Below are positions 17,269 through 44,509 of a stretch of 64,000 bases of DNA, one piece after another. Source of the DNA: Mytilus trossulus (Eukaryota); assembly GCF_036588685.1 (NCBI RefSeq), contig NW_026963293.1:186001-250000 (forward strand), given 5' to 3'. Every line of letters begins with the position of its first letter. Position 1 is the first letter of the stretch. The notes beneath the pieces are model-generated. The model was not told the DNA's origin. It was given only the letters and a program-made list of their open reading frames with translations, and made no database searches. The translations under genes were made by a program, and so were the position numbers.

Positions 17269-17481
17269 TCATTTCTTTTTCTCTTCCTTTGTTCTGCAAA
17301 CTAATACAGGAACATTAGAATGATGAACAAGATAATCACTAACACTCCCTAACAGTGTCCTCCGTAATTTACCAAGAGCTCTAGTTCCAGTAATGATCAA
17401 AGCGGCGTTTTCTTCTTTTGCAACTCTTAAAATTCCTTCGGCGGGTTTTGATGCTTGGGTACTTTTAGCGACGCCTTTTAA
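17269..17481 (-). CDS. USP-B exon 4 (last coding exon)
   Basis: cctttcag acceptor; LKGVAKSTQASKPAEGILRVAKEENAALIITGTRALGKLRRTLLGSVSDYLVHHSNVPVLVCRTKEEKKK*. Typical USP C-terminus. Confidence 0.95.
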   Translation of the reverse strand, partial: LKGVAKSTQASKPAEGILRVAKEENAALIITGTRALGKLRRTLLGSVSDYLVHHSNVPVLVCRTKEEKKK

Positions 17482-19061: not shown

Positions 19062-19168
19062 TTTCAATCTTTGTAGACAAGCCCCAAACTCTTCGAGTCT
19101 AGCTTCCACCTTATGAATTTCGTGATCTAATATGGTTTTGAATGCGTCTACGTCTTCAGGGTTTGGTG
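19062..19168 (-). CDS. USP-B exon 3
   Basis: cttatag acceptor and gtaatg donor; (S)PNPEDVDAFKTILDHEIHKVEARLEEFGACLQRLK, 107 nt. Confidence 0.9.
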
Positions 19169-20456: not shown

Positions 20457-20552
20457 AATGATATAGTTCAGAAGAGGAAAGCAATTCGTTCATCTCTACA
20501 CAATATACCAATATTACGTAGTCATCTGTTTTGTGAACGTTCTTGGCATACC
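20457..20552 (-). CDS. USP-B exon 2
   Basis: attttag acceptor and gtaagt donor; (W)YAKNVHKTDDYVILVYCVEMNELLSSSELYH. Confidence 0.92.
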
Positions 20553-21759
20553 CTAAAATAACAATCATTACATGTTATGGCTTCAATTTAACCATTATTG
20601 AAAACAGTCAAACTAGAATTTAACCATTGTATAAACTAGCAAACTAAAATGAGAAAATGTAGCATAATGATAATTTAGCATGCAAACCGTGTTAACGAAG
20701 AATGTTTATCTCGTGATTACATCGGTTTTATCTACACAAATTCTATACTACATCGCTGAGAACAGTTTTAGTTTTGCAATGATGTTTTATCAATAGTGAT
20801 GCATTATTACCATGCGTGTCGTATGTTTATACGTCCAGAGATAATTGGCATATCTATTCATGTCAATTATTCATAACAGGCATTGACGTTGATATCTTTT
20901 GATAAAGTGTTGTTTTCGGACAGGAAATTGGTTTTTGATCTGTACTATTGTAGAAATAGAGCAAACAAAATCAAACGATTGAGGGTTATTGTCATTCAGA
21001 AGCTTCAAATTAAAAAAAAAAAACATCAGAAGGGCTTTGTCATTATTATTGTTTTAACATACAAAAACCGATATTTTTTTTATAGGGACAATTTTTTTTT
21101 AAACAATGTTGTTTTAAATTTTAAACGATTTTTCGAAATTTCAAAATCAAACAATTTCTAAAACAAAAAGTACCCACCCATGCCGCCTTACATACGAAGA
21201 ATGCTTGGTTCCTTAAATCATAGGTGACATTTTACGTGCTATTTACAGTTAAATGATTTGTAATGCTATTCGTTCTTTTATTTGTATATTTCTTCCCTTC
21301 CTTCTGTCATACCTTTTGATAAAACTCGAAATTAAAAATGTACTATCCAAAAGTAGTAATGTAGTACAGGGAATTAAAAACAAATAAAAATAAAAATAAA
21401 AAACAAATCATAGGTCACAAAATAATTTAAAAAAATGCAATTCAGAACAGTACATGGTTTGTAAAAAAGCAAAGAAAGGGCCTGTTATGAACAGCAAAAT
21501 GATTCTCCGCATTTTTTAGACTCATCATTATAAATGTGGTTCGTGCTATGCATGAAGTACAATGTAAGAAATGGTGAGTTACTCTTATTAAACGTACATT
21601 TGCTTTTTACCAAATAGGAAGAAATAAGACCACTTTCAAAGGGGAAATCTGAATCAATAACTTGTTTTTATGCGCTCTTAAACAAAGTCTTACACTTTTT
21701 AATACTGTAACATATGGAATTGAGTACAATTTTTCAATCCTACTAGTGAACATGCAAAG

Positions 21760-21913
21760 AAACTCATCATATATACCAGGATTAAATTTTGTACTTACGC
21801 CAGACGCGCGTTCTGTTTACAAAAGAGTCATCAGTGACGCTCGAACCCAAAATAGGCCAAATAAAGTACGAAGTTGAAGAGCATTGGTGACCTAAACGTT
21901 TTGCCAAATACAG
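21760..21913 (-). mobile_element. 5'-truncated family A retrozyme with a damaged hammerhead (21797-21840)
   Basis: CUGAUGA and GUC are present, but GAAA has become AGAA and stem II is mispaired. Confidence 0.8.
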
Positions 21914-22824
21914 TAGTAATCGACAAAAGCACTTAACACTAATACAGTATAACATTGAAGCACACAAATAAGCACACGTACATTAAACATTGTAACATCT
22001 CTAAGACTTCTGTTTTTGTTTCAAATTGCAAGATTAAAAGTCCTGTTAGACCAGTTTTTACGAATGAATATTAATAGGCCTGCCCTGACGGATTATTTGA
22101 TATCTTACTGAGCAACTATAGTAATATAACATAGTCATATTTTCTATGTTTTTATGCGTGGTCAGTCCAATATTGGAAGTGTTGAATTACATATTCCATT
22201 TAAGTAAGTTTAGTATATAACATGATAATTGTGAACATAAAATAGAGAGTAAAATAAAATGAGTTGCTTTCGTGCTTCTTGTTTTTGTTTGTTTGAAAAC
22301 CGTAGCTGAAACAAGTGGTAAGTTCTATCATCAGATTCTATTGACTATTGTGCTGGACCGACTAATTTTATTTACTTACAATCAATATGACACAAAATGA
22401 TATTCATAAATGCTTCATATGTAATTTATAATTCATGTCAGGAAGTCATTTTTCAAAGAAAACATACAGAGGAGACAACAAAGGAAATTGTAGAATATCT
22501 CATACATATTGATAATGTATAAACTAATTTGCACTGCATATTAAACTAGATTAGAAACTATTCTCCACGTCAAAAACCTTATAGTTGAATGGGGTCATAA
22601 ATACATATATAAACTCAATCGTCGATAACGAAAAAGCAGTTTCCTCGTCAATTCTTTTTAATATTTGCGAAGTGTAAAACTCGATGGTTATAAGTTTCTA
22701 AGTTTACAAAACATTAATGTTTAATGAATTTTAATATCTCTGATGAAACGAGAGGGTGCTACAGAGTAAAGGCTTATAAAAAAAAACATTGCTAATTGAC
22801 AATAAATTTGTTGTCAGGCATAAA

Positions 22825-23007
22825 TTACCTTAGCTGTATTTGGCAAAACTTTTAGGAATTTTGGTCATCAATGCTCTTCAACTTCGTACTTTATTTGGCC
22901 TTTTTAACCTTTTTGGATTCGAGCATCACTGATGAGTCTTTTGTAGACGAAACGCGCGTCTGGCGTATATACAAAATTTAGTCCTGGTATCTATGATGAG
23001 TTTATTT
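22825..23007 (+). mobile_element. 5'-truncated family A retrozyme
   Basis: Reverse complement of 25378-25565; ends ...gatgagtttattt. Confidence 0.85.
22923..22966 (+). ncRNA. Minimal type I hammerhead ribozyme, intact core
   Basis: GCAUCA CUGAUGA GUCU-UUUGU-AGAC GAAA C GCGC GUC^UGGCGU, predicted cut after 22960. Stem I has one mismatch and can extend through GGAUU (22915-19) pairing with AGUCC (22980-84). Confidence 0.88.
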
Positions 23008-23230
23008 GCATGTAATGTAATGTTTAACCAATAAAACTGAAAACAAATGCATGCTAATTATCATACGTCTAATGTATTTTGTTTTTGTATTAGTTAAAAT
23101 TAAGAATAATGGAAAAAAAATTCACACGTTACAAGAATCTGGCATGAGACTATTAAGACTAGTTATATAAGCAACAATGTACAATAAAAATTGTGTCTGT
23201 ATCTTATACTTTAGTATGGAGAATAATTCA

Positions 23231-23347
23231 TTCATGTCAATATTATATTTGTTAAATATCAAGTTAAAATTCATGTCAATATTATATTTGTTAAATATAA
23301 AGTTAAAATTCATGTCAATATTATATTTGTTAAATATAAAGTTAAAA
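23231..23347. repeat. Minisatellite, 3 x 39 bp
   Basis: Unit ttcatgtcaatattatatttgttaaatat(a/c)aagttaaaa. Confidence 0.95.
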
Positions 23348-24926
23348 CATGGGTGTTTTTGCTTTCAGCATCGATTTCTTGAAGACAAAATAAAATTTAG
23401 CATGCTCTTGTGTATAATCATGAGTTAAACTAAACAAAAACCATTATTGTCAGACAATTATAACTAGCAGCTGGAAAAAAGAAAAAAAGTCTTCTTTAAA
23501 ATTTTGGCTTTTAGAAATCTGTTTATTTCAAAACATCATGACAAAAGTTTGACCAAATGTTGTTGTAAGTTTTCATAGAAATTATGAAATAGTTTGTTAT
23601 TCTTTAAAGAGATTTTAAAATAAAAAATGACAGTCCATGTGCAAACTGTCGGCTGATAATGCACCAAAGATAACCCATCTCATATGATATATAAGATAGA
23701 ACACATCAGTATTAAATTCACACAGTAAACCTTGATTTGTGCAGCGAAGGAGGAACGTCGGCACAAGAACGTAATAAAAAGGCTTTTAATCAGAATAATT
23801 ATGTATCAATATTTGATATTATCAGACATTGCTGTGATATTTTTATTTATACTAAAACTGTTTAGTTGATGAAAAAGACACGAAGAAAATCCCGCAAGGT
23901 CACATGCAATAATTATTTCTTTCATGTGCAATAAGTATCATACGTAGAATAGAAACGTTTACCTATTTGATCCTTTCCAATTAATTCTCTTGAAATTAAA
24001 TTCCCGAACTTTAGCCTATGTACAAAATGTAATCCTTATTACATGGAACTTATGGCAAATATGATTAAAAGTAAATTTGCATTGTATTTGGATCAATAAC
24101 AGTGAACAATAAGGAACGAATATTCTTTGCTGTAGATATTATTATCAAAAGTACACTTAAACAAACATTACATTCTTTGACGTCCCTTGAATATCTTTTG
24201 CTAATCAGGTATTGCTTGAGTGTCAATTGACAATAAAAAAAAACCAAGTGTCTGTTGTATCAATACGCTCCTGTAGATAACTCGTGTATCTATTTATGTC
24301 AATATGTCATGAACGATATTTCAGTGATGTTGTTTTTTTAAGATTTTTTATCAGACACATATCCCATTCTGACCATTATTATCTAAGAATATAGCACTCT
24401 GTAGTATTCCGTAAGTCAGAAGTTATATATTAATCTGTAACCAACGTTCTCTTGACAGAGTTATTTTAAACTGCATATGTTTATATAACATGTATAATAA
24501 ACAGAATCGTGTTGTACAATCATTGCGTCTGTTATTTTGGGGAGATGTGGGGTATACACTAACCAGACATTAACCAAACAAAAACAATAACCAACATATA
24601 TCTATTGGGCAACATTAGTGAATTGGTTAAACTGTTTCTTAAGATCACATCCTTCCCCTGTATGTCCCGGTTTGTGGATTAGCAACAACGTAGATTAAAG
24701 GAAATACACTAAAAATAAGAAGAAGATCAAGTACTTAACTTAAAACTATAAATGATATGATAGACTACAAAAATGTAAACAATATTGAATAAACCCCATT
24801 CTTATGTGTGTGCGAAACGTAGATATGTCAAACATTTGCAGAACCCATATTGATAAAAATTCTATTAATTCTTATTCATTGCTGTACTAATGTTTAACAC
24901 TAACACATGAACGCGAAACATGTTTA

Positions 24927-25271
24927 CGTATTGTTATGCGTTTACTTTTCTACATTGGTTAGAGGGTTGAGATCTCACAAACATGCTTAACCCCGCCGCA
25001 TTTTTGCGCCTGTCCCAAGTCAGGAGCCTCTGGCCTTTGTTAGTCTTGTATTATTTTAATTTTAGTTTCTTGTGTACAATTTGGATATTAGTATGGCGTT
25101 TATTTTCACTGGACTAGTATATATGTGTTTAGGGGCCAGCTGAAGGACGCCTCCGGGTGCAGGAATTTCTCGCTACATTGAAGACCTGTTGGTGACCTTC
25201 TGCTGTTGTTTGTTATTTGGTAGGGTTGTTGTCTCTTTGACACATTCTCCATTTCCATTCTCAATTTTATT
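24927..25271 (+). mobile_element. Truncated copy of the 10717-11526 interspersed repeat
   Basis: Direct sequence similarity; lacks the MITE insertion. Confidence 0.75.
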
Positions 25272-25419
25272 TCGATTCTTTTCTAATAGTTGTAATTAAT
25301 CACAAACAAACACAGATGACCATCAATATTTTTATTTCACTTATGTGTTGCAAACTGATAATCATTATTATACACTGAAATAAACTCATCATAGATACCA
25401 GGATTTAAATTTTATATTT

Positions 25420-25463
25420 ACGCCAGACGCGCGTTTCGTCTACAAGACACTCATCAGTGACGC
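25420..25463 (-). ncRNA. Minimal type I hammerhead with intact core and weakened stem II
   Basis: GCGUCA CUGAUGA GUGU-CUUGU-AGAC GAAA C GCGC GUC^UGGCGU, with one G.G mismatch in stem II. Confidence 0.8.
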
Positions 25464-25794
25464 TCGAATTAAAAAATGTTTAAAAGGCCAAATAGCTATA
25501 GAGTACGAAGTTGAAGAGCATTGAGGACCAAAAATTCCTAAAAGTTTTGCCAAATACAGCTAAGGCAATATATTCGTGTGGTAGAAAAGCCTTAGTTTTT
25601 CAAAAATTCAAAGTTTTTGTAACAGTTAATTTATAATTATGAACATATCAATGATAACTCAAGTCAACACAGAAGTGCTGACTACTGGGCTGGTGATAAT
25701 TACTCTCGGGGAAATAAATCTCCACCAGCAGTGGCATCGAGCCAGTGGTTGCAAATAAACTCATTATAGATATTAGGATTAAAATTTTATATTT

Positions 25795-25838
25795 ACGCCA
25801 GACGCGCGTTTCGTCTACAAAAGACTCATCAGTGACGT
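25795..25838 (-). ncRNA. Minimal type I hammerhead ribozyme, fully intact
   Basis: ACGUCA CUGAUGA GUCU-UUUGU-AGAC GAAA C GCGC GUC^UGGCGU. All core residues and stems are present; predicted cut between 25801 and 25800. Confidence 0.9.
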
Positions 25839-26965
25839 TCGAATTAAAAAATGTTTAAGAGACCAAATAGCTATAGAGTACGAAGTTGAAGATCATTGAG
25901 GATCAAAATTTCCTAAAATGAACTCTTGTTATTGCATCTTTATCTGGAATTGTCACACCTCTTATAATAATATACAACTGCGACATTTAACAGTTCTTAT
26001 CTTTGATAAGCCATTTTACAGTTTTTATCAAATGAAGTCAACAATATTCTACATAAATCTAATGGTACAAATAAGCATATGTTGTGTATCAAATCCAGAT
26101 GAATCAAGGTTAATACGCATGCCTTGCTAAAAAATTAAGTGCATGATGGGAAGAAAATTAATATGATGTTTATGTGTGTAGGACCCTGGACCAAGATAGT
26201 ACTCCCAACCGCGATATTGAAGTTGAAATACGACGGTTTGACGTTGAAGAGCATTTTTGTCACGTTGAAGAACGATGACGACATTGGGACGTTATCTTGG
26301 TGTTTGATACGCCAAAGTGCGATGATGGCAACGCTGAAGTGTGGTGGATTACATAAACTATTTTTTCAATGATTTTGATATCAATGTAGACGTCACTTTT
26401 AATTGTTCATAAGGGGGATTTACTTTCAATACTATGGGAAATGGATGAAAACTACAAGGGAAAGAGGGTAAATATTACCTTCTTCGATGTACTTTTTATT
26501 AAAATGTGTTTTAGATGTATGAAGCAGCGTGGCCTTCTTTGAATAAATATGTACCCGCAGACTCTCCGAAATATAATATAACGGTAAACGAGAAAATCAT
26601 GAGTGTAACAAAATAAAGAAAAGTGCTAACGCAGAATTATATTCATATTCAGATATTTAAAGAGGGCGATCTCTCGTCTAGTATGCAACTATAACTTATG
26701 ACATACATAGACAATGCAAATGTGTATACTAACTAGGAAACAAATACACCGCTAATATCAATTGCACGTCTGTAGATTTTAAACTATCACGCGTCATATA
26801 AACCATCGCATATCAACGAACGGACCATTGCACATCAGCGTGACCATTGCATTTCTGTGTTCTTATCCCACTTCTGAGTCCTAAGTGAAAAACAAACTTT
26901 GACATAATTTCATAATTGATATATAAAAGTAACATAAATAACCGAGAAAAAAGATAGTCTGAAAT

Positions 26966-28068
26966 AAAAAAGTCAATTGTTCATTTGAAAGGTCTTTCCT
27001 TTTTCTTTTATTGATAGCCTTCTTAGGTAAAAAAATATATGGTTGCTAAGGACATTTATGTTCCTAACAATTAGTTATTATGGACAAAAATCATTCCTAA
27101 GGATAAAAATATTCTCCCAGTGTTGAAAATGTTAATTAAAAACTATTCATAGTCTTTGAAGTTAAAAAATAAGTGATTGCTAAGGACTTCTATGTAGTTG
27201 CTTGGGACAAAAATTTCATTTCCAGTATAAAGACATTCATATTTATATTATTCATAGCCTTCAAAAATAATTGGTTGCTTAGGTGTTTTATATCGTTGCT
27301 AAGGATCTGGACCTCCAACCTTGACCTAATTTTATAGATCTTATTATGCTGAACATTTTTGCAATTCAAAGTTTCTTTCTATCTCTAACCTCTTTTGAGT
27401 AATAAGCAAAAAATCATCATTTCCGAGCCCAAAAAATGATTGGTGCCATAGGTCCATAATAGTTGGTCCAATAATTTTGGACCCAGCATAACAAATGTAG
27501 ATTTTGCCAAGACACGCATTTTCTAATTACATTTTATCAGTCATCCTTTACGGTTATTGAGTAAATTCGATAACAAGCTAAGGTCAAAATCTAGGTCATT
27601 ACCTTGACGTTTGACCTTAGGTTAATTTTCATGGTCACGTGAATTGATGATCATTAATGAAGATTCAAGGTGGTTACAGCTTACAGTTTCTAAGTTTTAG
27701 TTGCCAACCGACATTGGTTAATTTTGATGAGTCGTTGAATCTTTTCAAACCAAATGTAATGAAGAACCAAGGTCAGCTTCTACACAAAATCTATCCTTCG
27801 GTTTTTTTTCTACCTATTATTGTTAAAGAGTTAGAATGATTACAAGGTTTTCGGTGTTAGGGGAGATAACCACTATAAAAGAAAGGTTACGAGGTCGTGC
27901 CCTTACCACAAAATAGCTTTTGGTCAACCGATACTAGATACCTAATATGATTTTAACATGTCGCGTACTTATTTTGGAAAATGTCGTTAAAGTTAGGCGG
28001 ACAGAATATTAATAATCAGAAGATATACAGTAAGGTCTTTCCTTATAGTGAAAGGAAAGACCGTAATA
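26966..28068 (-). mobile_element. Helentron-associated non-autonomous element, copy 2
   Basis: Collinear with 9549-10684. The empty paralogous site is at ~31841-31860 and there is no TSD. Confidence 0.8.
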
Positions 28069-31000
28069 ACATGCACTGTCAGTTTTATATAATGACAAAA
28101 CACGCAACTGACGGACACTATCTTGATTATTAGTTAACAACTTTTATAGTTTATATACAGAATGCAACAATACATCAATACAGTTTGACATATATGATAT
28201 TTATGTTTCATTTTTTTCCGTCTTGCTCGTAGATGTTATCCATAGATTCGTTTTGGTTTTACAAAATGATGGATGGTGTTTTACTTTAAAGATACAAAGA
28301 ATACCTCATTGATTGATCAAATGTTTGCCTTCTGAATTTATATTACCATTCCAGTCTTCGAGTAACCTAGTTTTAAATGTTTTGAAAAAAGAAAAAAAAT
28401 ACTTTTAAATTTAAAGAAAATGCACCATAACCCTTATAGTTATAACTTATCAGAACAGTCTATTAATTTGCAATAAATAACAAACTGCACAAATAATATT
28501 TATAAATGTGATTAAGTTAGTTTCTTTTTACAAAATATGATGGCAAATGGAACAAGAACAATCAGTATTTTCCAATTAATTAAATCACTAAACTTGACTA
28601 ATCGACCCACGAATATAACACTAAAGCAAACATAATCTCCCTTAAAAACTGGAAGTATTTATGGGATAATGAAAATATTGCGCTACGCTCCTGGAACATG
28701 CTGAAAAGGGACAGCACAAGCGATTTCAAGTATGTCTGACATCTAGGTAAAATAAAAAAATTATCGATTAATTTGTTGGTTTTATTTAGTATGAGTTGGT
28801 TCAGATAGCTTAATGTCTTGCAATTATGAAGTGATAATATATTTTAGAAATGTCTCCAGATACTGTTGAACTTTTGTTTTATAAACTGAGGATTTATGTG
28901 GTATTTTCCAGGATAATATGTTATGTCTTATCGTTTGAAGTCAACATAATTATAAAATTGTCTTTCCATAACATCATTGTCATTTAAATTGGTATACTGG
29001 TATAAAGTTTGAAATTGAATGTTAGTAACGTAAGCGCGTCCCTGTTTTGTGACATTCAGTGGTATATGTCATTGACTGAATATGTTCGTTGTTGTTCTGC
29101 GATTTGCATGTTGTGTCCACTAAAACATTATTTGTTTATCTGTTTCCTTTGCGATGAATGGTCTTGTGTGGGTTTGTGCTGTATTTATGTCAATTATGTT
29201 GCTATTTAACGATATTTATTTTAACATTGTCGTAAAGTGGGAGTTTTTGTTTGTCATTAAGCCATGTTCAAACCACATTTTTTTTATAAAATGTCAAGAA
29301 ACAAGTCAGGAATATGGCATTTGTTATCAAATAGTTTGTTTTCTCTTAATCGAGTTACGTCTTTTTAACACCGGTTTACTAGTGTTACCTTTAGTTACTA
29401 GTTGCCTTTAACAGTAAAGAATATACTGTGATGATAGGACAGATAGAAGTACAAGTTACTTCACAAAGTCGGAAATGGAAAACTTATATAGACAGGGATA
29501 AGTCATGAACATGGTAATTTGTGCTAAGTTAAACACAAACATGTAAAGAGTACTAAAAATTGATTGTATCAGTATTATGACGCGGAAACCAACTGCATTG
29601 GTCTTTTTCCTGCATGTCAAATAAGTTATAGTTATTGACCAAGCAAGTCGGTATATTGGATTTAATCTGCACAGCTGGTGTGACCCTGATTAACCCGAAC
29701 GACGTAAAACTTTTATTATATTCAACTATTTGTATGGTAAATTATTGTTAACGCTTTTATATCTATTTACACAGGGGTAAATAGGAAGATAAAACCAGTA
29801 GTTTTCAGAGAACTTAGTAACACAGAAGACTAAATAATGAGTGACGCGAACAAATCCATATACTGATAATATACCATAGTTACGATGCTTTGAATGGATA
29901 AACAGTTCCTAATCCCTTCATTCCACCAGTCATGTTGTTCACGTCAAGAATAGATATGTCTCATTCTATGAAAAGTCAGAAACGAGGAGAATAGGTTTGT
30001 TATAATTTTTAACCGAGGTCCTTTGTGACACAGATATTTCGTAAAGGTAACCAAAGTCATTTAGGTGTTTGTTTTTGTTGCACTTCAGTGTTCTTGTTGT
30101 TCCTTTGTAACATATCAGACATTCAGAATAATGAAGGCCAGATTTCACACAAAGTGTGTAGCCACCTTAAAACAAAAAAGACAAGAACATGCAACATCTC
30201 ATTTTAGCAATTGAACAACCATTCAACATTTTACCCCATTAAGGGATGAGGTGGCTTGTTTCGGCGATGATCAATCAACTGATTGCAGTTAGTGAGGTTC
30301 CTTATTATTTATTTATTGATATTTGTATGATGAACTAGTAACACAGGCACTGGTCTCTGAAGACAATTATCCTTATCTGTGTATGCTGTAATAAAAAAAA
30401 TAAAAGTGTTTGTTGTTTTTCCAGAGACAAGTACCTGTGTTTGCTAATATTACTTTCCCCAACACTGAATAGAAATAAAACAATATATTAAAAAATGATG
30501 TAAGAATGTTTTGCAAGAAACTTTTGAATACAAAATCGTGGAAATGACTTTCCAAGAGCTTAACGCAATTGTCTTCTCTAAGGCACGATCAAAGTTAATA
30601 TACATTCAAACCATGCAGATTTATATAAAACTGAGGACATGTGATCGATATGATTGCCAATGAGAAAACTTTCCACCAAGGCTCAAAGGACGGGCATATA
30701 GTGATATAATGTTTAACTCAAATATAACAAACATGATATTAGTGGGTATTCTATTTGCTAGATGCATGCAGGATTTTTTTCGATCCTAAAAACCAATTGA
30801 AATTTAAGTGGTTTGAATTAATCTAGTGGAAATTAAAATTGGACTGTACAAATTGCTACATCATTTAAAGGATATTGATCAAATACAAATGTATGAATCA
30901 TGTGCACTCAAATATTTAAAAATAGACAATCAAGATTCTCTCTTTTCAGTATTTAACAACTTCTTTCGTCACTTTTGTTATTTGTTAAACACAATTGCTG

Positions 31001-33224
31001 AAAAGAAAGTGTGAATGAAAAACAAGAGTAGGCGTTGATTATCTGCATCAAAATAGATCAGTGTTGAAATTTGATTAACTACAACAACAACATTTTATAA
31101 CTCATATATGCATTTTATTTGGCTCAAACAGTCTATCTTATTTGACTACACCAATTAAGATATAATGAATACTTATACATGTAATTGATTTACAATTTTA
31201 CCAAAAATTAAATTTTAAATCTAGCCTCGTGCGTCTAGGCAAAAACCATTTATGAAAAGGATACAATGCTTTTCATGTCGACGTATACTTCAATTTAGAT
31301 TGTTTGTTAGAAGCAGTTTTTCGGGTTTCGAAGTTAAAAAGGGCTTATCCACTTTAAAGACTACTATAAACGGTGGGTAATATGGGGAGAGGGCAAAGTT
31401 TACGTTCTGTGGCGATATTTTTTCCAAATCTAAAAAATGTTTTTTTACGTACAATGGAGCATGACATTAGCTGAAAACATAGGGTCCGAGAGTCTCCTAA
31501 TTAATACGGGAAACATGGTAAAGGAGGATAATGAGAATGTAAGGATAAATGTTAAGGCAGAATATATACATGCATACATTTAAAAAGGAAGATCTCTCAT
31601 TTAGTCTGTACATCTGTAGCTTTTTAGTTAGTATGTTAGCAATCGTTATATAGATCATCGCACATCACCGATTTGATCATTGCACTTCGACGCAGGCAAT
31701 GGTACTTCAGTTCGACCATAAGACTTCAACTCGAACTTCCCTTTTCTGATCAATGAGTCCCTCATGATGAAAAAACCTTAAGAAATAATTTGATAATTGA
31801 TATGTTAAAGTAATATTAAAACCCGAGAAAAGATGGTTTGTAATAAAATTCATTGTCAGATTTTTATAATGACAAACAAGCAACTGACGGACACTATCAT
31901 GATTCTAAGTTAACAAACAACTTGTATAGTTTATATACAGAATGAAACAATAAATCAGTGCAGTGTGACATACATGCATATATAATAATTTTGTTTCATT
32001 TTTATTCTGTCTTGCTCATATATGCAATCCTTAGATTCATTTGGCTATACAAAATGGTATTAAGTAGATGGTGTTTTACTCTGGCAAAGATAAAAAGAAT
32101 ACCTAATTTATCGATCAGCTTGTTCACCTAATGTATTTATATTACAGTTCAAGTCCAAACGTAATCTTGTTTTCAATTATTTCATAAAAATTTGTTTTTG
32201 ATTTAAAGCAAATGCATCATAACCTTTTACGTTATAACTGATCAGGAAAAAAAAGGTATCAATTTGCAATATATAAAGTATAGCACGCGGAACATCAATA
32301 AATTTGATCTGATTAAATAAGTTTCTTTTCATAAAATATGATAGCAAATCGAACAAGAAACATCAGTTGTGTTTTCCAATTATTCAGGTCATTAATTTTT
32401 ACTTAACGAACATTGAATCTAACTCAAAAGTAAAAATGATTTACTAATAGATGATAATCAAAATATTGCGCTCCTTGAAATGCTGAAAACGGAATTCTAA
32501 ATATACTTATATTTAGGTACGACGAAAAAAGGGTGAATGTTTGAAAAACAAGAAAGTTTTACGAATTACTAATAAAATGACACCGCACTTTTCACATTAA
32601 CAGGTCAAGCACAATAGTGGATTTGCAAAATGAAGACTTCAAATTAAAATGATAAGTCGTAAAATATTGACATATTTACAAATAATATAGCTTTTTAACC
32701 AAGTATTTATTTAAGTCAGATTTATCACACTCTATGTATTTCATATGTTAATATTGTTTCCATCACTTCTACTTTACAATGAGGAAAACAACTGAATAGA
32801 CTTCATTAGAGACTTTCGGTAAATCTTTGTTAATGCATGACAACTAGTAATCTAACCTTTCCATTGCCTACTCTAATCAAAGTAATGGAATCTTAATACA
32901 ACTCTGGTAATCGACATCAAAACTCACGAAACTAGCTATTTGTTTCAAGACAAATACATCATAAACAAAGCTGATTCCTGTTCAAATCGAATAGTTTTCC
33001 TGTTGACATGTTCATTGTTTGAAATCTGAATGTCGACCTTTCTTTTAATAAGACATCCATAACATGAAATAGGCTTATCATTAATAAATGCATGAGATGA
33101 ATTCTTTTGCACGAGACATATCAGTGTCAATTGAATGAAAACGATGAATGCCGAATTAACTACAAAGTCGAATAACTTGCAATACGATTAAAAACATAAG
33201 ATAACAATTTAATTGTATGCGCCT

Positions 33225-33397
33225 TATCTTAGAGTGGTATAATCAGACTTTTTAGGCACAAATAAGAAATACTAGCTGGTTTTACTTGTATTGATTCTAA
33301 ACTCCATTTGCACATAAATCTCAACGTCATAAGTAGCATGACGTTACAATACATACATAGCGGTACCGCGAACGTCTAATGAACACAGTCCTGAACA
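33225..33397 (-). repeat. 3' LTR (TG...TA)
   Basis: 172/173 identical to 38992-39164. Preceded on the minus strand by GGGCCCCCAGGA at the PPT position. Confidence 0.95.
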
Positions 33398-33513
33398 TCC
33401 TGGGGGCCCGCGAATGATAATTTAAGCAATAAATAAAGAAAAAAACTTTAAAATGAAATAACTATTGTCTCTCAAATGAAATAAAACTTTAACTTTTTAC
33501 ACTTAAACAGTCT

Positions 33514-36500
33514 TTATGTTTTACGGAACGGTTGAATCCAACTTTTGATTTTCTCCTTGGCATCAGTTTTTGCTTTTCTAGTTGAAGTAATAGTATTGTC
33601 ACTGGAATCACACGGACTATCTGTTGATAAGAGTGGATATAGCTTACTTATTGGTCTAGATGTCGTGCCATTTTTAGTGCGTGAAATGGCAGACCTACAA
33701 AGTCCATCTCTCCCATAAACTAACTTAACGATAATCGCTATATTCCACACTGTCCTTGGGGTATCATCATGAATCTGTACAATGTCGCCCACTTTAATGA
33801 TTTGAGTGTTATTTCCGGTGTTTCTATGTTGTTCCCTAAGTGAAGTGAGATATTCTCGTCGCCATCTGTTCCAGAAGTCGTGAATAATGCGTTTTTGAAC
33901 ACTAGATTGTCTATTTGCTGTGTAATGTGTTAAGTTTTGTACGTTCTCCTCACTGCTGAAATGAATTGTTCCTGAATACGGTAAAGTTTTAACCCGTCTT
34001 TCATAGAGAAGATGAGACGGTGTAAGCGGTTCATCATCGGTAAGGTCCGTTGATACGTGGGTTAACGGACGATCATTTAATATAGCCTCTATCTCGATCA
34101 CAATTGTCTCTAGCACTCTAAAAGTAACTAGTGCTCGTCCTAACACTTTCTTTATGCAATTCTTGGTCAAGCCGATCAATCGTTCCCACCAACCACCATA
34201 CCATGGTGCACGCTTCGGAATAAATTTCCACTGAGTTCCATATATGTTGAGTTGTTCCTGAATAGTAGTAGATTTTGTAAGCATTTCAATTTCCTTCGCT
34301 GCTGCGATATATGTTGTACAATTGTCAGACATCATGATTTTTGGTAACGATTTGCGGCTTGTGAATCTCCTAAACGCTAGAATGAATGTTTGTTCTGTAA
34401 GGTCTTCAACGATTTCTAAATGCACAGCTCTAGTGTTAGCGCAGGTGAATAGACAAATATATGCTTTACTAATACTGTTTCTTTTTGTTCTCACATTCAA
34501 TGCTCCTGTGAAGTCGACCCCGGTTACGGTAAACGGTGGTGAATCATTAAGTCTGTCGGACGGCAGTGGTGGTGGGTCGGGTGTATGATAGGGTCTTCCT
34601 GTAATTTTACGGCCAGTAACGCAATTACGGAGTATTGATTTAACACATTGTCGAATCGACGGAATCCAGTAAGACTGGCGAATAAATGTCACTGTACTTT
34701 CTAATCCAGAGTGTAAATTCTTTGCGTGTGCATCCATCACAATTAATTTACAAAATCTGTCTTTGTTCGGTATTAGTACTGGAAATTTAGCTGATTCATC
34801 AATAGGTGCATTGTTAATTCTCCCACCACAACGGATAATGTTCATTTTATCCATGTACAATCTAAGTTGCTTCACTAGCGCATTTTTCACTGATTTGTTG
34901 TTTAAACTCTCAATAACATCCGGGTATTTACGCAGTTGCGAATCTCGAATCCATGAAGTCGAAGCAGTCTGAATTTCATTGACACTAAGATTTCCTGTTA
35001 GTTTGTCATTATTTCTACAGTTGTTTATGAATCGGTACATGTATGCTGTTAAACGCAAAAGTTTTTGGTATGAGCTGTAGCGTTGTATATCCATAATTTT
35101 ACTTATTCCTTCATAAAATCTGATTTTCTGTTGCGGTTCACTAGTTGATTGTCCTTGCTCAATTGTAGTGCTAAGAATGTGCGATTCTTTATTCTTCCAC
35201 TGTGGCCAGTTTGATTTGTCAGTGAGCCATTCGGGTCCTTTCATCCAAAGATCCAATTCTAGGAATTTGGTTGCAGTTACTCCTCTCGATAGCATATCTG
35301 CCGGATTTGAATCTGTCGGACAGTACTTCCATGTGTATTCTTGAGTAATTTCGTTAATTTCCTTCACTCGATTACTAACGAAAACGGGTAATTGTTTCTC
35401 AGTAGTAAGCCAACTTAAAGTTATCTGACTGTCACTCCATAATGTGACGCTTGTAACATCCAAGTGCGATTTCAAATGCTTGACGAGTCTTGCGCCTATC
35501 AAAGCTGCACTGAGTTCTAACTTCGGAATTGTTAACTGTTTCAGAGGTGTCACTCGATTCTTTGACATGATAAGTACGGTTTCTTTTCCACTGACTAAAT
35601 ATGCGCATGCTCCATAGGCTTTCAAGCTTGCATCCGTAAACACATGTAATTCTACATTGTCTGATTTTTCTTTGAAATACGGTCTATTAATTTTCAAATG
35701 TGAACATTCATTAATATCTTTTAGTACACACTTCCATTCTGTTGTAATTTCAGATGTAAGAGGTTCATCCCAATTTAATCCTTTCTCCCACAAAGTCTGC
35801 ATAAGCATCTTACTACGCACAGTAACTGGACCAATAAGTCCGAGTGGATCATAGATTTTAGACGATTGTCTTAAAATCTCTCGTTTTGTCATGCGTGTTT
35901 CTTCAATATCGGTGTATTCCGGTTGGCGAAAGTAAGTGTGTCGTTACAAGTGTTCCATCTCAATCCAAGCACTTTTATGAGTTCATCTTTGTCTAATACG
36001 CTGTGTGAATTTGCGCGGTCTCGCAAAAGTTGAGAATTTGAAGCCCATGAGCGCAAGTTAAATCCTGCTCTAGTGAATAAGTCTCTTGATGTATCAAAAT
36101 ATTTCAGTAATGCACTCTCTGTAGGAAAACTCGACAGTATATTATCAACATACAAATCGTTCTTTAAAGTGTCAGTATATTCACAACGGTTCTCTCTCAA
36201 GTGTTTTTGCAGAACGGAATTCAGTATGAATGGCGATGAAGTGGCTCCAAATAATACAGACTTAAATCGGTAAGTTGATAGTGGAGTTGATGGGTCTGTT
36301 GGTGTATCGAACCAAAAGAAACGTGTGACATCTCTATCCTGTGTCTCTAGTCCCACGTTCAAGAACGCCTTCTCTATATCAGTAGTAACGGCAAATTGGT
36401 GTAAAAAAAAACAAAAAAAAACGAAATCTTAAAAGTATGCCGACGAAGTCATTTAAATTGGGTGGAGTGGTCATCAAACAATCATTAAGACTAGACGATT

Positions 36501-38972
36501 CTGGTGTTGCTTTACAACTGCAGTCGAATACGACCCTGATTGGTGTTGTTGTTGAATCTTTTCTCACAGCATGATGCGGAATATAGTGTATTTTGCTCTT
36601 TTCATCGGCCTCATTAGTAGTATCCACTTTCTCTATGAAGCCGCTTTTCTCCTGCTCAGCCATTATTTCTCCATATTTTTCCAGTAGTTTGGGTTCCTTG
36701 CTAAGTCTTCTTACTACACTTTCCGTCCTTCGTTGTGCAATGGCTTTATTTGTCGGTAACGTAGGGTGATCCTCTTTCCATGGTAACGTTACAAAATATC
36801 TGTTGTCAGTCATGGTAACGAATTTGTTTCTCTTCATAAGTCTTTTGAATATCCATCTGTTCTTCTAACTTTGTAGTGTCAATTATCTCGGTAGCCAGTG
36901 ACTCTATTTTCCAAAATTTCTCCAAGTCGTACTCATCGGTTTTTGTTGCGATCATCACGGTCATCATTGAAGCTCTCTTGTATCCATCTATGTCAGAGTT
37001 GTGTGAATGTAGCGTTTCAGACAACAGGTATCCGATTTTTGATTGAACAGCTGTCGGTCATTCGCCTCGGATAATATCATTCTGAACAATTGACCAGAAG
37101 TAATCAGCTCCAATTAGAATAGAAATTTCAAAGTTTTCATCTGCTGTTACTGGGTGAGCTAATTTGATTCCTGACAAATATGTAAGTTTTGCTGCTTGGC
37201 GTACATAGGTTCTCATCGGTACTGCGATCTCTGGAACGATCAAGACTCGAATCGGAAGTTTACCCTCTGTAGTTATGAGATATACCAATCCTGTACTCAA
37301 ATTGTCTCCAAATCCGGATAGGTTAACGCTTTCAGTTCCAGTAGGTTTGAGTTTCAATTTTTCGGCTAATTCCTCTGTGATAAATGAGCGCTGTGCGCCT
37401 TCGTCAAACAATATTTTTGCATCAAGTATTTCATGTTCTGCACTTACTGGGTTAATTGCTGTCTTCAAAAGTACACGATCTGTCGATTGCGAGTGTAAAA
37501 CAGTGTCTGGTTCCTCCGCGTTGTGTTGAATTGTGCCTACGGTTATATCCCCTGTTGGTTTGTTGTCTTCATTTGTTTTAACATTATCTTTGCAAATGCT
37601 GGTGTGATGACGTTTGTGACACTTGTTGCAAGTTTTTGTAGATTTACATGCGGACAAGCTATGGTGTCCTAGACAGTTAAAGCATAAACGATCTTTTTTC
37701 ACGATTGACATCCGGCCATTGTAATCAGATACTTTAGTGCAATTAACAGACGAGTGTGGCTCCTTACAGTACGCACAGAGTGGCTTGGGTTTAGTGATAG
37801 TTGCGTTTGTATTCTTGTTACCTCTATTTCGATTACTATAATTTGTATTTGTCAGAAAGGCGGCGGTAGCTGTAGGGTGTTCTAACTGTTCTGAAGTTTT
37901 GCCTGCATCCATAATATAAAATTCATCGAAAATTTCACGGCGTAATTCATTCAGTTGTAAATCTGTAGATCTATATTGTCTGGCAAGATTTCTGCGGATT
38001 TCACCGGGTAGTTTGTTCATAATAATGGGCACTAAAAACGCTCCATATGTGTCTTCACTTTGACCTAATGACTCCAATCCTCTAATGTGTATCTCAATTT
38101 CATCGTAGAAGTTTTTCATGCTAAATATCGTGTATTTAGGGGCTGGTATATCAACTAGTGCTTGCATATACTTCTGTCTTATTACATGCGATTGTCCATA
38201 TCTTTCTTGCAGTAAAGAAATAGCTTTCTCATAAATTGCATGTGTAAGCGCAAACCCTGTGACGGTTTTCAATGCTTCATTATGGAGTAGTGACTTCAAA
38301 TAATTAAATTTCTGAACGTTTCCAAGAGTAGTGTTTTCGTGAATGGATGTCTCGTATGAATCCCAAAATGACTGCCACTGCATAATATTACCATCAAAGG
38401 TAAGAAGATTCAATTTGGGCAACTTGTTGTACTCATTTAATCTAGTGTTACTACGTGAAAACTGAGTTTCCGGTACACGGAAGTTTGAATTACATGTATT
38501 CTGTTTATTGTATATCTCGGGTTGAGCATAACTTTGTTGATCATGAGCAGGTTGAGCATAACTTGGTTGATCATGAGCGGGTTGAGCATGAGCGGGCTGA
38601 GCAGAGGCGGGTTGAGCAGAGGCGGAATGTGAAGGGTCGCTATAACTGACAAAATATTTTGCATTTGTACTGAGTGTGGATGTATTGACAAGAATGAGCT
38701 TTTGTATTTGCGTTATTTTTCCATCTAATGTGTAAGCATACTCATCTGAATCGACGATCTCGGCTTCTACTTCTCCTTCATCAAGATTTTCTAGAATGTC
38801 CTCATTAAGTTTTTGTAGTGTCTCTTGTTTCTTCAACAGATTGTTCACAATTTTAGTTAACTCTTCAGTGTTCACGGGCTCGTCTCCGTCGTCTCGGATG
38901 TCCTCAAATTTCTTCAAAAGTCGGGAAATAACTTCTGTGTCCTGCACGTATAGAACGTAGTTTGGAACTCAT
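33514..38972 (-). pseudogene. BEL/Pao gag-pol polyprotein with 4 frameshifts and 1 in-frame stop
   Basis: ATG at 38972 (MSSKLRSIRAGHR). Gag KLPKLNL..FDG and zinc knuckles, protease LFDEGAQRSF, RT YVDN, RNase H VFTDAS, integrase GVDFTG / SDN / WERL. Lesions near 38932, 37058 (TGA), 36808, 36403-36421 and ~35910. Confidence 0.93.
38520..38625 (-). repeat. 15-bp coding minisatellite in gag (xxxQP pentapeptides)
   Basis: Encodes ASAQPASAQPAHAQPAHDQPSYAQPAHDQQSYAQP. Confidence 0.85.
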
Positions 38973-38981
38973 CTTGGTCCT

Positions 38982-38990
38982 ACGGCACCA
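38982..38990 (-). promoter_or_regulatory. Primer-binding site (tRNA-His type)
   Basis: TGGTGCCGT one base inside the 5' LTR, complementary to the ...ACGGCACCA 3' end of tRNA-His. Confidence 0.75.
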
Positions 38991-38991
38991 A

Positions 38992-39164
38992 TATCTTAGA
39001 GTGGTATAATCAGACTTTTTAGGCACAAATAAGAAATACTAGCTGGTTTTACTTGTATTGATTCTAAACTTCATTTGCACATAAATCTCAACGTCATAAG
39101 TAGCATGACGTTACAATACATACATAGCGGTACCGCGAACGTCTAATGAACACAGTCCTGAACA
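38992..39164 (-). repeat. 5' LTR (TG...TA)
   Basis: Direct repeat of 33225-33397. Confidence 0.95.
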
Positions 39165-39338
39165 CGCCTGAAGGGCTTTTTCATATTGACCTTCAGCAGA
39201 TATTGCCGAAGTAAAATATGTTAATGAAAATTATAGCAAAGCAACGTACAATTTTAAATTGCACGTTTTTCACATTTTGAAATATTTTCTTGTAAATTAA
39301 ATTTAACTCTTATATAGACAATACCTGTTAAGTGTCTT

Positions 39339-39424
39339 TTAATATCAGCTGTATGTGTACGAGGCTAAGAAACTATGGGCTTTTACTCTTGTTTCAAGCT
39401 GAGTACAAAAACAGCTGATATTAA
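39339..39424. repeat. Inverted repeat / hairpin
   Basis: ttaatatcagctgtatgtgtac ... gtacaaaaacagctgatattaa; 22-bp arms with 2 mismatches. Confidence 0.75.
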
Positions 39425-42400: not shown

Positions 42401-43431
42401 AGTACAGTAACTTGCGCAAATATTCAAAAATAAACAAAACTTAATCAAGATACTATCTTACCATTATTTAACACTTTAATTCAACACATTCATTCAACAC
42501 TTTTTCATTAATAGTACATGAATATATAACACTCATCTTGAATGAAAGTGTGAATAAACAAAAAACAGTAAGTGTTTTTTTTTTCCTGCATAAAAATGGA
42601 CCAGTTTTGTTATTCAATTAACTACAACAATACTGCACTCCATTTTGATTAAAATATCATAAAATTTATGTTTTCTTTTACTTAACACAATTTATCTAGT
42701 TTGATTCTAGAAATTAAAATAATCTGAACATTTATAAGGGATTAACAATTCTACTTGAATCCAATTTTAAATTGATAACAATCTTTGTAAATATGGCTAA
42801 CCATACTTTGTGGGTCTAGGAAGAACAAAACTTCGAAGTATGAACTAAAATGACACAAGACTCGAGTATCGTAAGAGGTATTTTCATCTCTTTTTCAGTA
42901 CACATTTCAGATTTTATATACAACCTATTCAGCAGCACAGATTTTGTCAATATGAGCAAACCTGGTTTTGAAGGAACCTGCGTTTGAAGATACTTGCAAT
43001 GTTTAAGATATTTGTACGAAAATTAGAATGGCTGCTAAGATAACTAGAATGGCCTTTATTTGCAATGAATTTCTAATGAATAGCTTGGCATTGTGAATTT
43101 GGATTTGGATGTTTATTCGGCACCTATGACCAAAGATCAACATAGAACCCTAAAGAAAGAAAAACGTTCATCTATTGTTTTAATCCTGCTGATAATACTC
43201 GAACATTATAAGGCGGAAAACACATGTTTTTGTATGAGCTTAATATTTAGATGTGCAAAAAGATTTTACAGTTTCAGTAAAGATACAGGGTCCCGATTAT
43301 AAAACTGAAAAGATAAACTTGCGTATTATGATACATCTTGGATTAAGCCTGAATTAAACTAGTTTCACACTTAGCCTCTATAGATTTGTAATGGAAATTT
43401 GTTCATTTTTTGAAATTATTATCATGATTAT

Positions 43432-43630
43432 GACCTAAGGTTTCAACTTTCTCGGGCAAAGTTGGCTTTAAATGAATTTGGCTATTTATTTTAGGTATTT
43501 TTGACATATAGCTCTTCAACGATTTTCTGTACTTATCTATCTTTCAAATGTTTGTCTTTGAGCGTTCCTGATGAAGGTAAATCCAGAAAAGCGATTCGGA
43601 CGCAAGAAATTATTAAACGTGTTGTTTTTA
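43432..43630 (+). mobile_element. Family B retrozyme fragment
   Basis: Shares gctcttcaac..gtactt..tttgagcgt with family A but carries a different hammerhead. Relics lie at 58251-58390 and 59240-59340. Confidence 0.7.
43562..43603 (+). ncRNA. Minimal type I hammerhead ribozyme, family B (UUC triplet)
   Basis: GCGUUC CUGAUGA AGG-UAAAU-CCA GAAA A GCGA UUC^GGACGC: 6-bp stem I, intact core boxes, very short stem II. Confidence 0.75.
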
Positions 43631-44333
43631 ATTCTTTAGTATGAATAATGCAAAATGTACAGCATCTTTTCGTTAAAACTCGTGTTTATTTTTACAAAAA
43701 GAACGTAGAAGCTTGCATATGACAAAAATATGTGTATTGACAACAAAGACTTTTAAGTAAGATGCCATTCCATTTTTTTTCTGAAATATCAAGTTTACTT
43801 TATATAAAATGACTAATATAAGTCAAATCATAATAAAACAATTTAACTGCTCAAGACATAAATATTTAATTAGGATATAATTCACAATGACAAGTGCATA
43901 AGTGATATATGTTTTGTATCTGATCCAAATAAATCGTTCGTATTTTCAATTTTTCTTGGTAGTATCACCAAAAGAAGTTGAGAAGAGGACTACTAAATTG
44001 GTTTCTTCAATTATGAATGTTAATATGTGACAATATATTTCTGTATATCAATTACTTTGTTTTAAAAGAAAAAAGGAATCTGGAAATCTTCAAGGATCAT
44101 TTTCAAATAATGACATCATGGTATTTTTTTTAATATCGGTAATAGAATATTTTGAAGAAGACTGCTGAAGGAAAAGATAAACATGATAGAATCATTTTCA
44201 AAACAATGTGGCTGTGGCCATTGACTGACGACCTAAATTATCCCATTGACTGGGACAGATTAGGTGAACATTTGTCTGTAACAAAAATTGCTCACTACTT
44301 ACTTATTATAGAATTTAAACCGTGGGGTCATCA

Positions 44334-44483
44334 AAGGTTCGTTACGCCTTTAATAGTAAAATAATTCGAAAAATTAATCAGGAATAACCTTTATATTTTG
44401 ATTTATATTATTGATATAAATCAAAACATCGTGTTATTCCTGATTATTATTTCCAATTACTTTATTTAATGGTTGAGAACCTT
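44334..44483. mobile_element. Fold-back (palindromic) MITE-like element
   Basis: Arms aaggttc..taatcaggaataac..ttttgatttatat / atataaatcaaaa..gttattcctgatta..gaacctt. Confidence 0.7.
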
Positions 44484-44509
44484 CAAATAAAATTTCTAAA
44501 TATATTTGT

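What the first reader, a model, noticed from the sequence alone, without database searches (positions are those of the whole stretch)
25378..25917. Double-hammerhead cassette in the sense strand of a stress-gene intron, predicted to release a 375-nt RNA
Seen: two type I hammerheads head-to-tail on the minus strand, the strand of the USP-B pre-mRNA, with GUC sites at 25801 and 25426. Cleavage at both would free 25800-25426 (375 nt). Each has a minimal stem III built on the palindrome ACGCGCGU. Established: minimal hammerheads of this kind in Penelope-like elements and metazoan non-LTR retrozymes cleave best as dimers through that palindrome, and retrozyme monomers accumulate as circular RNAs (reported for mussels). 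Inference: USP-B transcription could drive production of this circRNA without a promoter of its own, and cutting of intron 1 could affect USP-B splicing or output.
Basis: partly seen in the sequence, partly recalled or inferred. Interest (0 to 1): 0.82.

Follow-up and report, generated by a model that had tools for sequence, protein, structure and literature searches.

The report
Ordinary mussel retrozyme copy in intron
This is one slightly decayed copy of the already described mussel "retrozyme" repeat, a small hammerhead-ribozyme element present in thousands of places in this genome, which happens to lie in a long intron of a stress-protein gene, and nothing shows that it does anything for that gene.

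Summary
Two type I hammerheads lie head to tail on the minus strand. One is at 25838-25795 (Rfam 35.7 bits, above the cut-off). The other is at 25463-25420 (30.0 bits, below it). Their GUC sites are 375 nt apart, inside a 1.44-unit direct repeat spanning 25378-25918.

It is not a special cassette. It belongs to the Mytilus non-LTR retrozyme family described by Cervera & de la Peña in 2020. The cloned unit printed in their supplement has the same ribozyme and the same flanking sequence. This genome holds 18,701 exact intact hammerhead motifs, many in long arrays. Most of the dispersed copies sampled have the same layout: a fixed 3' end, a variable 5' start and two ribozymes around one unit.

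The upstream ribozyme is consensus-like. The downstream one carries two private, derived changes in stem II. These are part of an even decay of about 3.6% since insertion, so efficient double cleavage is doubtful.

The element does lie in sense in the inferred 35.4-kb intron 1 of a four-exon USP gene, but no RNA evidence could be obtained. CircRNA production driven by the host gene and any effect on USP-B remain untested.

The scan has noted this kind of element at least eight other times in this genome. Verdict: already known, low interest.

The parts
25378..25918 (-). Whole retrozyme insertion, 541 nt, 1.44 units: unit positions 258-375, then 1-375, then 1-48
   Evidence: The 3' end at unit position 48 matches the family's fixed 3' end. 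No target-site duplication was found.
25795..25838 (-). Upstream hammerhead (HH1), type I. Its core, stem II and helix III all match the family's commonest form, with cleavage after C25801.
   Evidence: 35.7 bits, above gathering score 34; commonest stem II and helix III. It differs from the ribozyme of the published, in-vitro-active mussel clone only at its first base.
25420..25463 (-). Downstream hammerhead (HH2). The core is intact but stem II is disrupted (GUGUC...AGAC). Cleavage would fall after C25426.
   Evidence: 30.0 bits, below gathering; the bases at 25448 and 25446 are private and derived; the hammerhead fold scores -1.0 kcal/mol against -5.4 for HH1.
25426..25800 (-). Predicted 375-nt monomer between the two cleavage sites
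   Evidence: GC content is 35.5%. It is 90.5% identical on average to 47 other units. The whole-monomer fold is not unusual (z = -0.95).
25753..25918 (-). 5' terminal repeat of the insertion, containing HH1
   Evidence: Six of the 12 differences between the repeats are derived in this copy.
25378..25543 (-). 3' terminal repeat of the insertion, containing HH2
55903..55990 (-). Inferred USP-B coding exon 1 (MAEK...VVIGIDGSDNSMFAIE), with donor GTAAGT and phase 1
   Evidence: It is the only exon-1-like sequence upstream of exon 2 in the window. An identical copy lies at C36:906616-906702.
20553..55902 (-). Inferred intron 1 of USP-B, 35,350 nt and full of transposable elements. It holds the retrozyme 30.1 kb from the donor and 5.2 kb from the acceptor.
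   Evidence: No RNA evidence.
20457..20552 (-). Inferred USP-B exon 2 ((W)YAKNVHKTDDYVILVYCVE...)
19062..19168 (-). Inferred USP-B exon 3
17269..17481 (-). USP-B last coding exon with its stop codon, the C-terminal half of the Usp domain
   Evidence: PF00582, 62.3 bits; 65.3 bits

Best explanation
The stretch is one dispersed copy of the known Mytilus non-LTR retrozyme, a non-coding repeat of about 365 nt. Transcripts of this repeat cut themselves with a type I hammerhead, and the host ligates the monomers into abundant circRNAs. Those circRNAs then serve as templates for reverse transcription. This copy looks like the product of one such event. Copying started at the family's fixed 3' end (unit position about 48) and ran 1.44 times around a circular or multimeric template, which left a hammerhead on each side of one full unit. 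The copy landed in sense in the long first intron of a USP gene and has since decayed neutrally by about 3.6% per site. The upstream ribozyme is still of the active consensus type. The downstream one has lost stem II pairing. If USP-B pre-mRNA runs through the element, the likely event is a slow cut at 25801/25800. Release of the 375-nt monomer would be inefficient. The genome's circRNA pool must come overwhelmingly from the thousands of other copies and the long arrays. Family identity, architecture, decay pattern and gene context are shown. The insertion mechanism, any cleavage in vivo and any consequence for USP-B are inferred.
For: Family identity: the supplement of PMC7229834 prints the cloned M. 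galloprovincialis unit with the same ribozyme and the same flanking unit sequence. That paper reports repeats of 350-390 bp, kobs of about 0.1/min and abundant circRNA. Copy number: at least 6,030 candidate places and 18,701 exact intact hammerhead motifs against 0 in the reversed control, with long arrays of 354-355 nt period. Architecture: among 14 dispersed copies examined, ten end within a few bases of ...GAUGAGUUUAUUU, while the 5' starts vary from unit position 153 to 341. Most carry two ribozymes. Decay: at all 12 differences between the two terminal repeats, one copy has the family majority base and the other a rare base. Three of the 12 fall in the 88 nt of ribozyme, which matches the overall rate. 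HH2's stem II bases occur in 0 of 47 other units. Its catalytic fold is 4.4 kcal/mol weaker than HH1's, and it scores below Rfam's gathering score. The near-identical copy on contig C36 matches at 99.5% over 2.8 kb, with no excess conservation in the ribozymes.
Against: No RNA data specific to this locus could be obtained, so transcription through the element, cleavage and circle formation are neither shown nor excluded. HH2's catalytic core is intact, and ribozymes with a weak stem II can keep some activity. The 8-bp palindrome could also let the two ribozymes pair with each other (duplex -13.3 kcal/mol). The repeat differences could in principle reflect a heterogeneous multimeric template rather than mutation after insertion. 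The link between exon 1 and exon 2 is a model.
Confidence: 0.85

Rival explanations
1. One reading: USP-B transcription drives production of a locus-specific 375-nt circRNA. Both hammerheads cut the pre-mRNA or the excised intron, and a host ligase closes the monomer.
For: The element lies in sense within the inferred intron. HH1 is essentially the ribozyme shown to be active in vitro. Both catalytic cores and both GUC sites are intact. Mussel retrozyme monomers do accumulate as circles.
Against: HH2 has a disrupted stem II, scores below the Rfam cut-off, and has a weak predicted catalytic fold. Its changes are derived and fit neutral decay. No run on record as RNA holds the locus. The laid contigs were short repeat fragments from other family members, and exon 2 and the unique intron had zero depth in the three runs guessed to be RNA. 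With 18,701 intact motifs elsewhere, any contribution from this copy would be minute.
Confidence: 0.12
2. The hammerhead cut in intron 1 tunes USP-B expression. It would sever nascent pre-mRNA before exon 2 is spliced, by analogy with the intronic CPEB3 ribozyme.
For: HH1 lies 5,249 nt upstream of the exon 2 acceptor. At the published in vitro rate of 0.1/min and assumed polymerase speeds of 1-4 kb/min, 12-41% of transcripts could be cut before the acceptor is made (the polymerase speeds are my assumption). An intronic self-cleaving ribozyme lowering host expression has a precedent (PMC10919898, abstract seen).
Against: There is no sign of selection: the ribozymes decay at the same rate as the rest of the element. 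In Xenopus 42-44% of retrozymes overlap introns, so intronic location is commonplace. The same intron also holds other dead retrozyme fragments in both orientations, an unrelated interspersed repeat and a young LTR element, so it is a sink for transposable elements. No expression data are available.
Confidence: 0.05
3. It is a short piece of satellite DNA, made by tandem duplication at the DNA level and not by retrotransposition.
For: The family also forms long tandem arrays, and no target-site duplication was found.
Against: The 3' end falls at the same unit position (46-51) as in many unlinked dispersed copies, while the 5' ends vary. That is the signature of copying from a fixed start, not of unequal crossing-over. 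The copy has unique flanks shared with its near-identical copy on contig C36.
Confidence: 0.04

Closest known systems
Mytilus galloprovincialis non-LTR retrozyme (Cervera & de la Peña, Nucleic Acids Res 2020, PMC7229834)
   Same: The ribozyme sequence is the same: HH1 differs from the cloned, self-cleaving ribozyme only at its first base. The unit sequence on either side of the ribozyme also matches. Unit size is 375 nt against the reported 350-390 bp. GC content is low (35%), there are thousands of copies, and tandem arrangement occurs.
   Different: Nothing differs at the level of the family. This particular copy has a 4-nt and a 6-nt insertion, 13 private substitutions and a damaged downstream ribozyme. 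The motif count in this assembly (18,701) is higher than the roughly 4,600-5,000 reported from the 2016 draft genome.
Amphibian satellite 2 / axolotl retrozyme hammerheads that act as dimers
   Same: Both are type I hammerheads with a very short helix III ending in a palindromic loop, carried in tandem repeats of about 330-350 bp.
   Different: The amphibian helix III has one base pair and needs dimer formation for good activity. The mussel type has two base pairs plus a tetraloop and is reported to cut as a single motif. A dimer requirement was not tested here.
Penelope-like elements with hammerheads in their terminal repeats
   Same: Both have minimal type I hammerheads, tandem or partial-tandem insertions and variable 5' ends. 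Penelope-like elements have been proposed as the mobilising partner (PMC7229834; preprint 10.64898/2026.07.22.740005).
   Different: No reverse transcriptase or GIY-YIG open reading frame is present here, so the element is non-autonomous. The link to a specific Penelope-like element of this genome was not tested.
Intronic self-cleaving ribozymes of amniotes (CPEB3 HDV-like ribozyme; HH9/HH10 hammerheads)
   Same: Each is a self-cleaving ribozyme in sense orientation within an intron of a protein-coding gene.
   Different: Those are single-copy and conserved across orders of mammals or amniotes, and for CPEB3 an effect on expression has been shown (PMC10919898). This one is a decaying copy of a repeat with thousands of copies and shows no sign of conservation.

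Membership tests
Hammerhead ribozyme type I (Rfam RF00163) | Score at or above the curated gathering score (34 bits) | tested here: met
   HH1 scores 35.7 bits. HH2 scores 30.0 bits and does NOT reach the cut-off.
Hammerhead ribozyme type I (Rfam RF00163) | Conserved catalytic core CUGANGA ... GAAA and an NUH cleavage triplet | tested here: met
   Both copies have CUGAUGA, GAAA and GUC.
Hammerhead ribozyme type I (Rfam RF00163) | Three helices around the core, with stem I open and stem II base-paired next to the core | tested here: inconclusive
   HH1 has a 6-bp stem I, a 4-bp stem II and a 2-bp helix III. In HH2, stem II has a G.G mismatch after 2 bp; the alternative is a shifted 4-bp stem that leaves 2 extra bases next to the core.
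Hammerhead ribozyme type I (Rfam RF00163) | Self-cleavage | not testable with these tools
   Inferred for HH1 only from its near identity to the ribozyme tested in PMC7229834.
Metazoan non-LTR retrozyme | Type I hammerhead within head-to-tail repeats of 150-450 bp | tested here: met
   The period is 375 nt here, with 1.44 units. Arrays of 354-375 nt period occur elsewhere.
Metazoan non-LTR retrozyme | Low GC content, with no LTR, primer-binding site, polypurine tract or coding capacity | tested here: met
   GC content is 35%. The only repeat is the unit itself. There is no meaningful open reading frame; the longest open stretch is 68 codons, stop to stop.
Metazoan non-LTR retrozyme | Many dispersed and tandem copies in the genome | tested here: met
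   At least 6,030 candidate places and 18,701 exact hammerhead motifs.
Metazoan non-LTR retrozyme | Sequence identity to the published Mytilus unit | tested here: met
   The clone sequence printed in the supplement shows the same ribozyme and matching unit sequence on both sides. This was compared by eye; no alignment tool was run on typed letters.
Metazoan non-LTR retrozyme | Expressed as linear and circular monomer RNA | tested here: inconclusive
   This is shown for the family in PMC7229834. For this copy the reads tools returned only short repeat contigs, and no run is on record as RNA.
Functional intronic ribozyme (CPEB3 / HH9-HH10 kind) | Single-copy and conserved at the orthologous intron across species | tested here: not met
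   It is a repeat with thousands of copies and decays evenly at the neutral rate. Orthologous loci in other species were not examined.
Universal stress protein (Pfam PF00582), the host gene | Usp domain above the curated cut-off | tested here: met
   The last exon alone scores 65.3 bits against a cut-off of 24. Exons 1-3 are too short to score. They were searched one by one by reference, and the joined model was not searched.

The most novel reading that the evidence does not exclude
Because the copy sits in sense behind a stress-gene promoter, induction of USP-B would feed HH1-cut intron RNA into the retrozyme pathway, along with some 375-nt monomer despite the weak HH2. That would couple stress to retrozyme RNA output and, through intron severing, dampen USP-B itself.
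Probability: 0.05. Interest if true: 0.5.

Novelty: already known. Interest (0 to 1): 0.12.

Why it matters
As it stands, this mainly matters for annotation. The stretch should be masked as a copy of the published mussel retrozyme, not flagged as a regulatory feature of the USP gene. Two by-products may be useful to specialists. First, a chromosome-scale assembly holds about four times more intact hammerhead motifs than the 2016 draft suggested. Second, dispersed copies share a fixed 3' end at unit position 46-51 with variable 5' starts and no obvious target-site duplication. That pattern constrains how and where reverse transcription of the circular template begins. If the host-driven reading were true, it would be a natural case of a ribozyme-bearing parasite borrowing a stress promoter.

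Tried and rejected
- **Run search and read laying:** The look-up of sequencing runs found no run on record as RNA. The best holders carried only 0.17-0.34 of the sampled words. Read laying on 20300-26200 with four runs returned only short Logan contigs, mostly 60-80 nt with 2-3 mismatches, which come from other family members. Depth was huge over every repeat and zero over the unique intron and exon 2 in the three runs guessed to be RNA. This says nothing about this locus, about read ends or about circular junctions. Both tools are now at their cap.
- **Target-site duplication:** none was convincing for this copy or for 13 other dispersed copies.
- **Folding:** the whole-monomer fold is not more stable than shuffled sequence (z = -0.95). 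The isolated 44-nt ribozymes do not take the hammerhead fold as their minimum-energy structure. This was taken as uninformative, because nearest-neighbour models ignore tertiary contacts.
- **Pfam on exons 1-3:** no hit, because the exons are too short.
- **First fuzzy-regex script:** it timed out and was replaced by a BLAST-based extraction.
- **Joined exon model:** exons 1 and 2 were joined only inside one script, to check the reading frame. The joined model was not sent to any search tool. The large protein searches were therefore not used to confirm the exon 1 to exon 2 link.
- **Satellite-DNA origin:** considered and rejected on the evidence of the fixed 3' end.

Full report
**What is in the sequence**

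On the minus strand, Rfam's type I hammerhead model (RF00163) matches 25838-25795 at 35.7 bits. That is above the curated 34-bit cut-off, and it is the only Rfam match in the 64-kb window that passes a gathering score. A local search adds a second match at 25463-25420 at 30.0 bits, below the cut-off. Both have CUGAUGA, GAAA, a GUC site and the helix III palindrome ACGCGCGU. The C of each GUC lies at 25801 and 25426. The two ribozymes sit in a 166-nt direct repeat (25378-25543 and 25753-25918) that is 93% identical with a period of 375. The whole element is thus 541 nt, or 1.44 units.

**What it is**

The window is contig C18:186001-250000 of a 1.3-Gb genome. The 375-nt unit finds at least 6,030 candidate places there. 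Scored copies are 85-90% identical. They occur both as long head-to-tail arrays and as dispersed copies.

An exact pattern for an intact ribozyme (core, base of stem II, helix III and GUC) matches 18,701 times, against 0 for the reversed control. Arrays of 354-355 nt period run for dozens of units.

Cervera & de la Peña (PMC7229834) described this family in Mytilus galloprovincialis. They reported about 5,000 type I hammerheads in 350-390-bp repeats, self-cleavage at about 0.1/min, and abundant circular monomers in several tissues. Their supplement prints the cloned genomic unit. Its ribozyme is identical to the commonest form here and differs from HH1 only at the first base. The sequence on both sides matches our unit as well. 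Membership of this published family is therefore shown, not just suggested.

**Why the 'cassette' is the ordinary form**

I examined 14 dispersed copies. Ten end within a few bases of the same unit position (46-51...GAUGAGUUUAUUU). Their 5' starts range from unit position 153 to 341, and most carry a ribozyme on each side of one full unit. No target-site duplication was evident.

A fixed 3' end with variable 5' ends and more than one unit length is what one expects if reverse transcription starts at a set point on a circular or multimeric RNA and runs on past a full turn. That is the model proposed in PMC7229834. The mechanism is inferred. The architecture is shown.

**State of the two ribozymes**

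Among 83 distinct ribozyme instances from the sampled loci and the window, 54 have an intact core. The commonest stem II is GUCUUUUGUAGAC. HH1 has that form. HH2 has GUGUCUUGUAGAC, which none of the 47 other units shares.

At all 12 positions where the two terminal repeats differ, one copy keeps the family majority base and the other has a rare one. This fits two repeats that were identical at insertion and have since diverged by about 3.6% per site. Three of the 12 changes fall in the 88 nt of ribozyme, which is the same rate as elsewhere, so there is no sign of selection on them.

The hammerhead secondary structure evaluates to -5.4 kcal/mol for HH1 and -1.0 for HH2. HH2's competing fold is also more stable. 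The alternative 4-bp stem II in HH2 leaves two extra bases next to the core. HH1 is therefore very probably active. HH2 is probably impaired, so efficient release of the 375-nt RNA is doubtful.

For invertebrates the paper reports efficient single-motif cleavage and a helix III of 2 bp plus a tetraloop, as here. The palindrome could still pair two copies (-13.3 kcal/mol). This was not tested.

**Gene context**

Pfam's Usp model hits the minus strand at 17293-17451 (62.3 bits; 65.3 bits for the exon alone). This hit is one member of a tandem cluster of USP genes. Upstream, I found three further exons, whose GT/AG sites and reading phases fit together:

| Exon | Coordinates (minus strand) |
|---|---|
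| 3 | 19168-19062 |
| 2 | 20552-20457 |
| 1 | 55990-55903 |

The exon 1-2 join reads ...FAIE-W-YAKNVHK.... No other exon-1-like sequence lies between exons 1 and 2. No other USP last exon lies between them either.

The closest paralogous exon 1, on contig C1, also sits about 29 kb from the next last exon. Intron 1 is thus modelled at 35,350 nt. The retrozyme lies in sense within it, 30.1 kb from the donor and 5.2 kb from the acceptor.

This is a model. No RNA evidence was obtained.

**Surroundings**

The intron collects transposable elements:
- other retrozyme fragments at 21803-21913 (-), 22820-23010 (+), 45430-45502 and 53763-54108 (-); in each fragment that retains the ribozyme region, the core is mutated;
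- an unrelated 345-nt interspersed repeat at 24927-25271, with at least 6,600 candidate places;
- a 5.9-kb LTR element at 33225-39164 with 173-nt LTRs that are 99% identical, also in sense.

Contig C36 carries a near-identical copy of the locus, 99.5% identical over 2.8 kb, with the same HH2 variant. It differs from our copy at three non-ribozyme positions in the element. It is either the other haplotype or a very recent duplicate, and its intron 1 is about 14 kb longer.

**RNA evidence**

The one search for sequencing runs found no run on record as RNA, and no run held more than a third of the sampled words. Laying four runs gave only short contigs from other family members. Depth was enormous over all repeats and zero over the unique intron and exon 2 in the three runs guessed to be RNA. 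This neither supports nor refutes expression of this copy.

**Verdict**

It is an ordinary, moderately old copy of a published family. It lies in an intron, as in Xenopus, where 42-44% of retrozymes overlap introns. One of its two ribozymes is damaged.

CircRNA production driven by the host gene and an effect on USP-B are possible in principle. At 0.1/min and assumed polymerase speeds of 1-4 kb/min, 12-41% of transcripts could be cut at HH1 before exon 2's acceptor exists. An intronic ribozyme lowering host expression has a precedent in CPEB3 (PMC10919898). Nothing here supports either idea for this locus.

Earlier notes of this scan list at least eight similar retrozyme findings in this genome. 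One follow-up reached the same 'ordinary copy' verdict.

Noticed in passing
window 24927-25271: An unrelated interspersed repeat of about 345 nt lies 106 nt beyond the retrozyme's 3' end. It has at least 6,600 candidate places in the genome, and the scored copies are 90-96% identical. It looks like a younger SINE- or MITE-like family and shows very high k-mer depth in all runs laid.
   Followed up: partly
window 33225-39164: An LTR retrotransposon of about 5.9 kb with 173-nt LTRs (33225-33397 and 38992-39164) that are 99% identical. Its pol-type open reading frames are on the minus strand (33514-35892, 35889-36362, 36379-36837, 37058-38947). It lies in sense within the same USP intron, upstream of the retrozyme in the transcript. 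It was observed only.
   Followed up: partly
window 69-365, 21803-21913, 22820-23010, 45430-45502, 53763-54108, 56756-56853, 57793-58041: Seven further fragments of the same retrozyme family lie in the window, in both orientations. Five of them retain the hammerhead region, and in each the catalytic core is mutated. For the 69-365 and 22820-23010 fragments no hammerhead instance was extracted. HH1 is the only hammerhead in the window above the Rfam cut-off.
   Followed up: partly
L003, L006, L007, L008, L015, L023, L025-L027 (dispersed copies) and window 25378: Dispersed retrozyme copies share a fixed 3' end at unit position 46-51 (...GAUGAGUUUAUUU). Their 5' starts vary and no clear target-site duplication was found. 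This points to a defined start site for reverse transcription on the circular template.
   Followed up: partly
G000 genome-wide, for example C1:113382-118368 and C1:269295-284873: The genome holds 18,701 exact intact hammerhead motifs (reversed control 0), many in arrays of 354-355 nt period. That is about four times the roughly 4,600-5,000 motifs reported from the 2016 draft M. galloprovincialis assembly.
   Followed up: no
G000:C36:803309-906702 compared with C18:163579-241990: Contig C36 repeats the C18 USP gene cluster in the same order and orientation, including the retrozyme (99.5% identical locally). It is either a second haplotype or a recent duplication. USP-B intron 1 is about 14 kb longer on C36, and the two sequences stop aligning beyond window position 26727.
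   Followed up: partly
window 1350-9043 (-) and C18:154261-203451: There is a tandem cluster of at least five USP genes on the minus strand. The neighbouring gene (USP-A) has its exon 1 near 9043-8987, its exon 2 near 4747-4670 and its last exon at 1350-1520. Its intron 1 is only about 4 kb, against 35 kb in USP-B.
   Followed up: partly
window 25774, 25773, 25765: Three clustered G-to-A changes on the RNA strand lie within 10 nt of each other in the internal copy of the unit's 5' region. The terminal partial repeat keeps the family's G at these sites. They may be chance or a clustered mutation or editing event.
   Followed up: no
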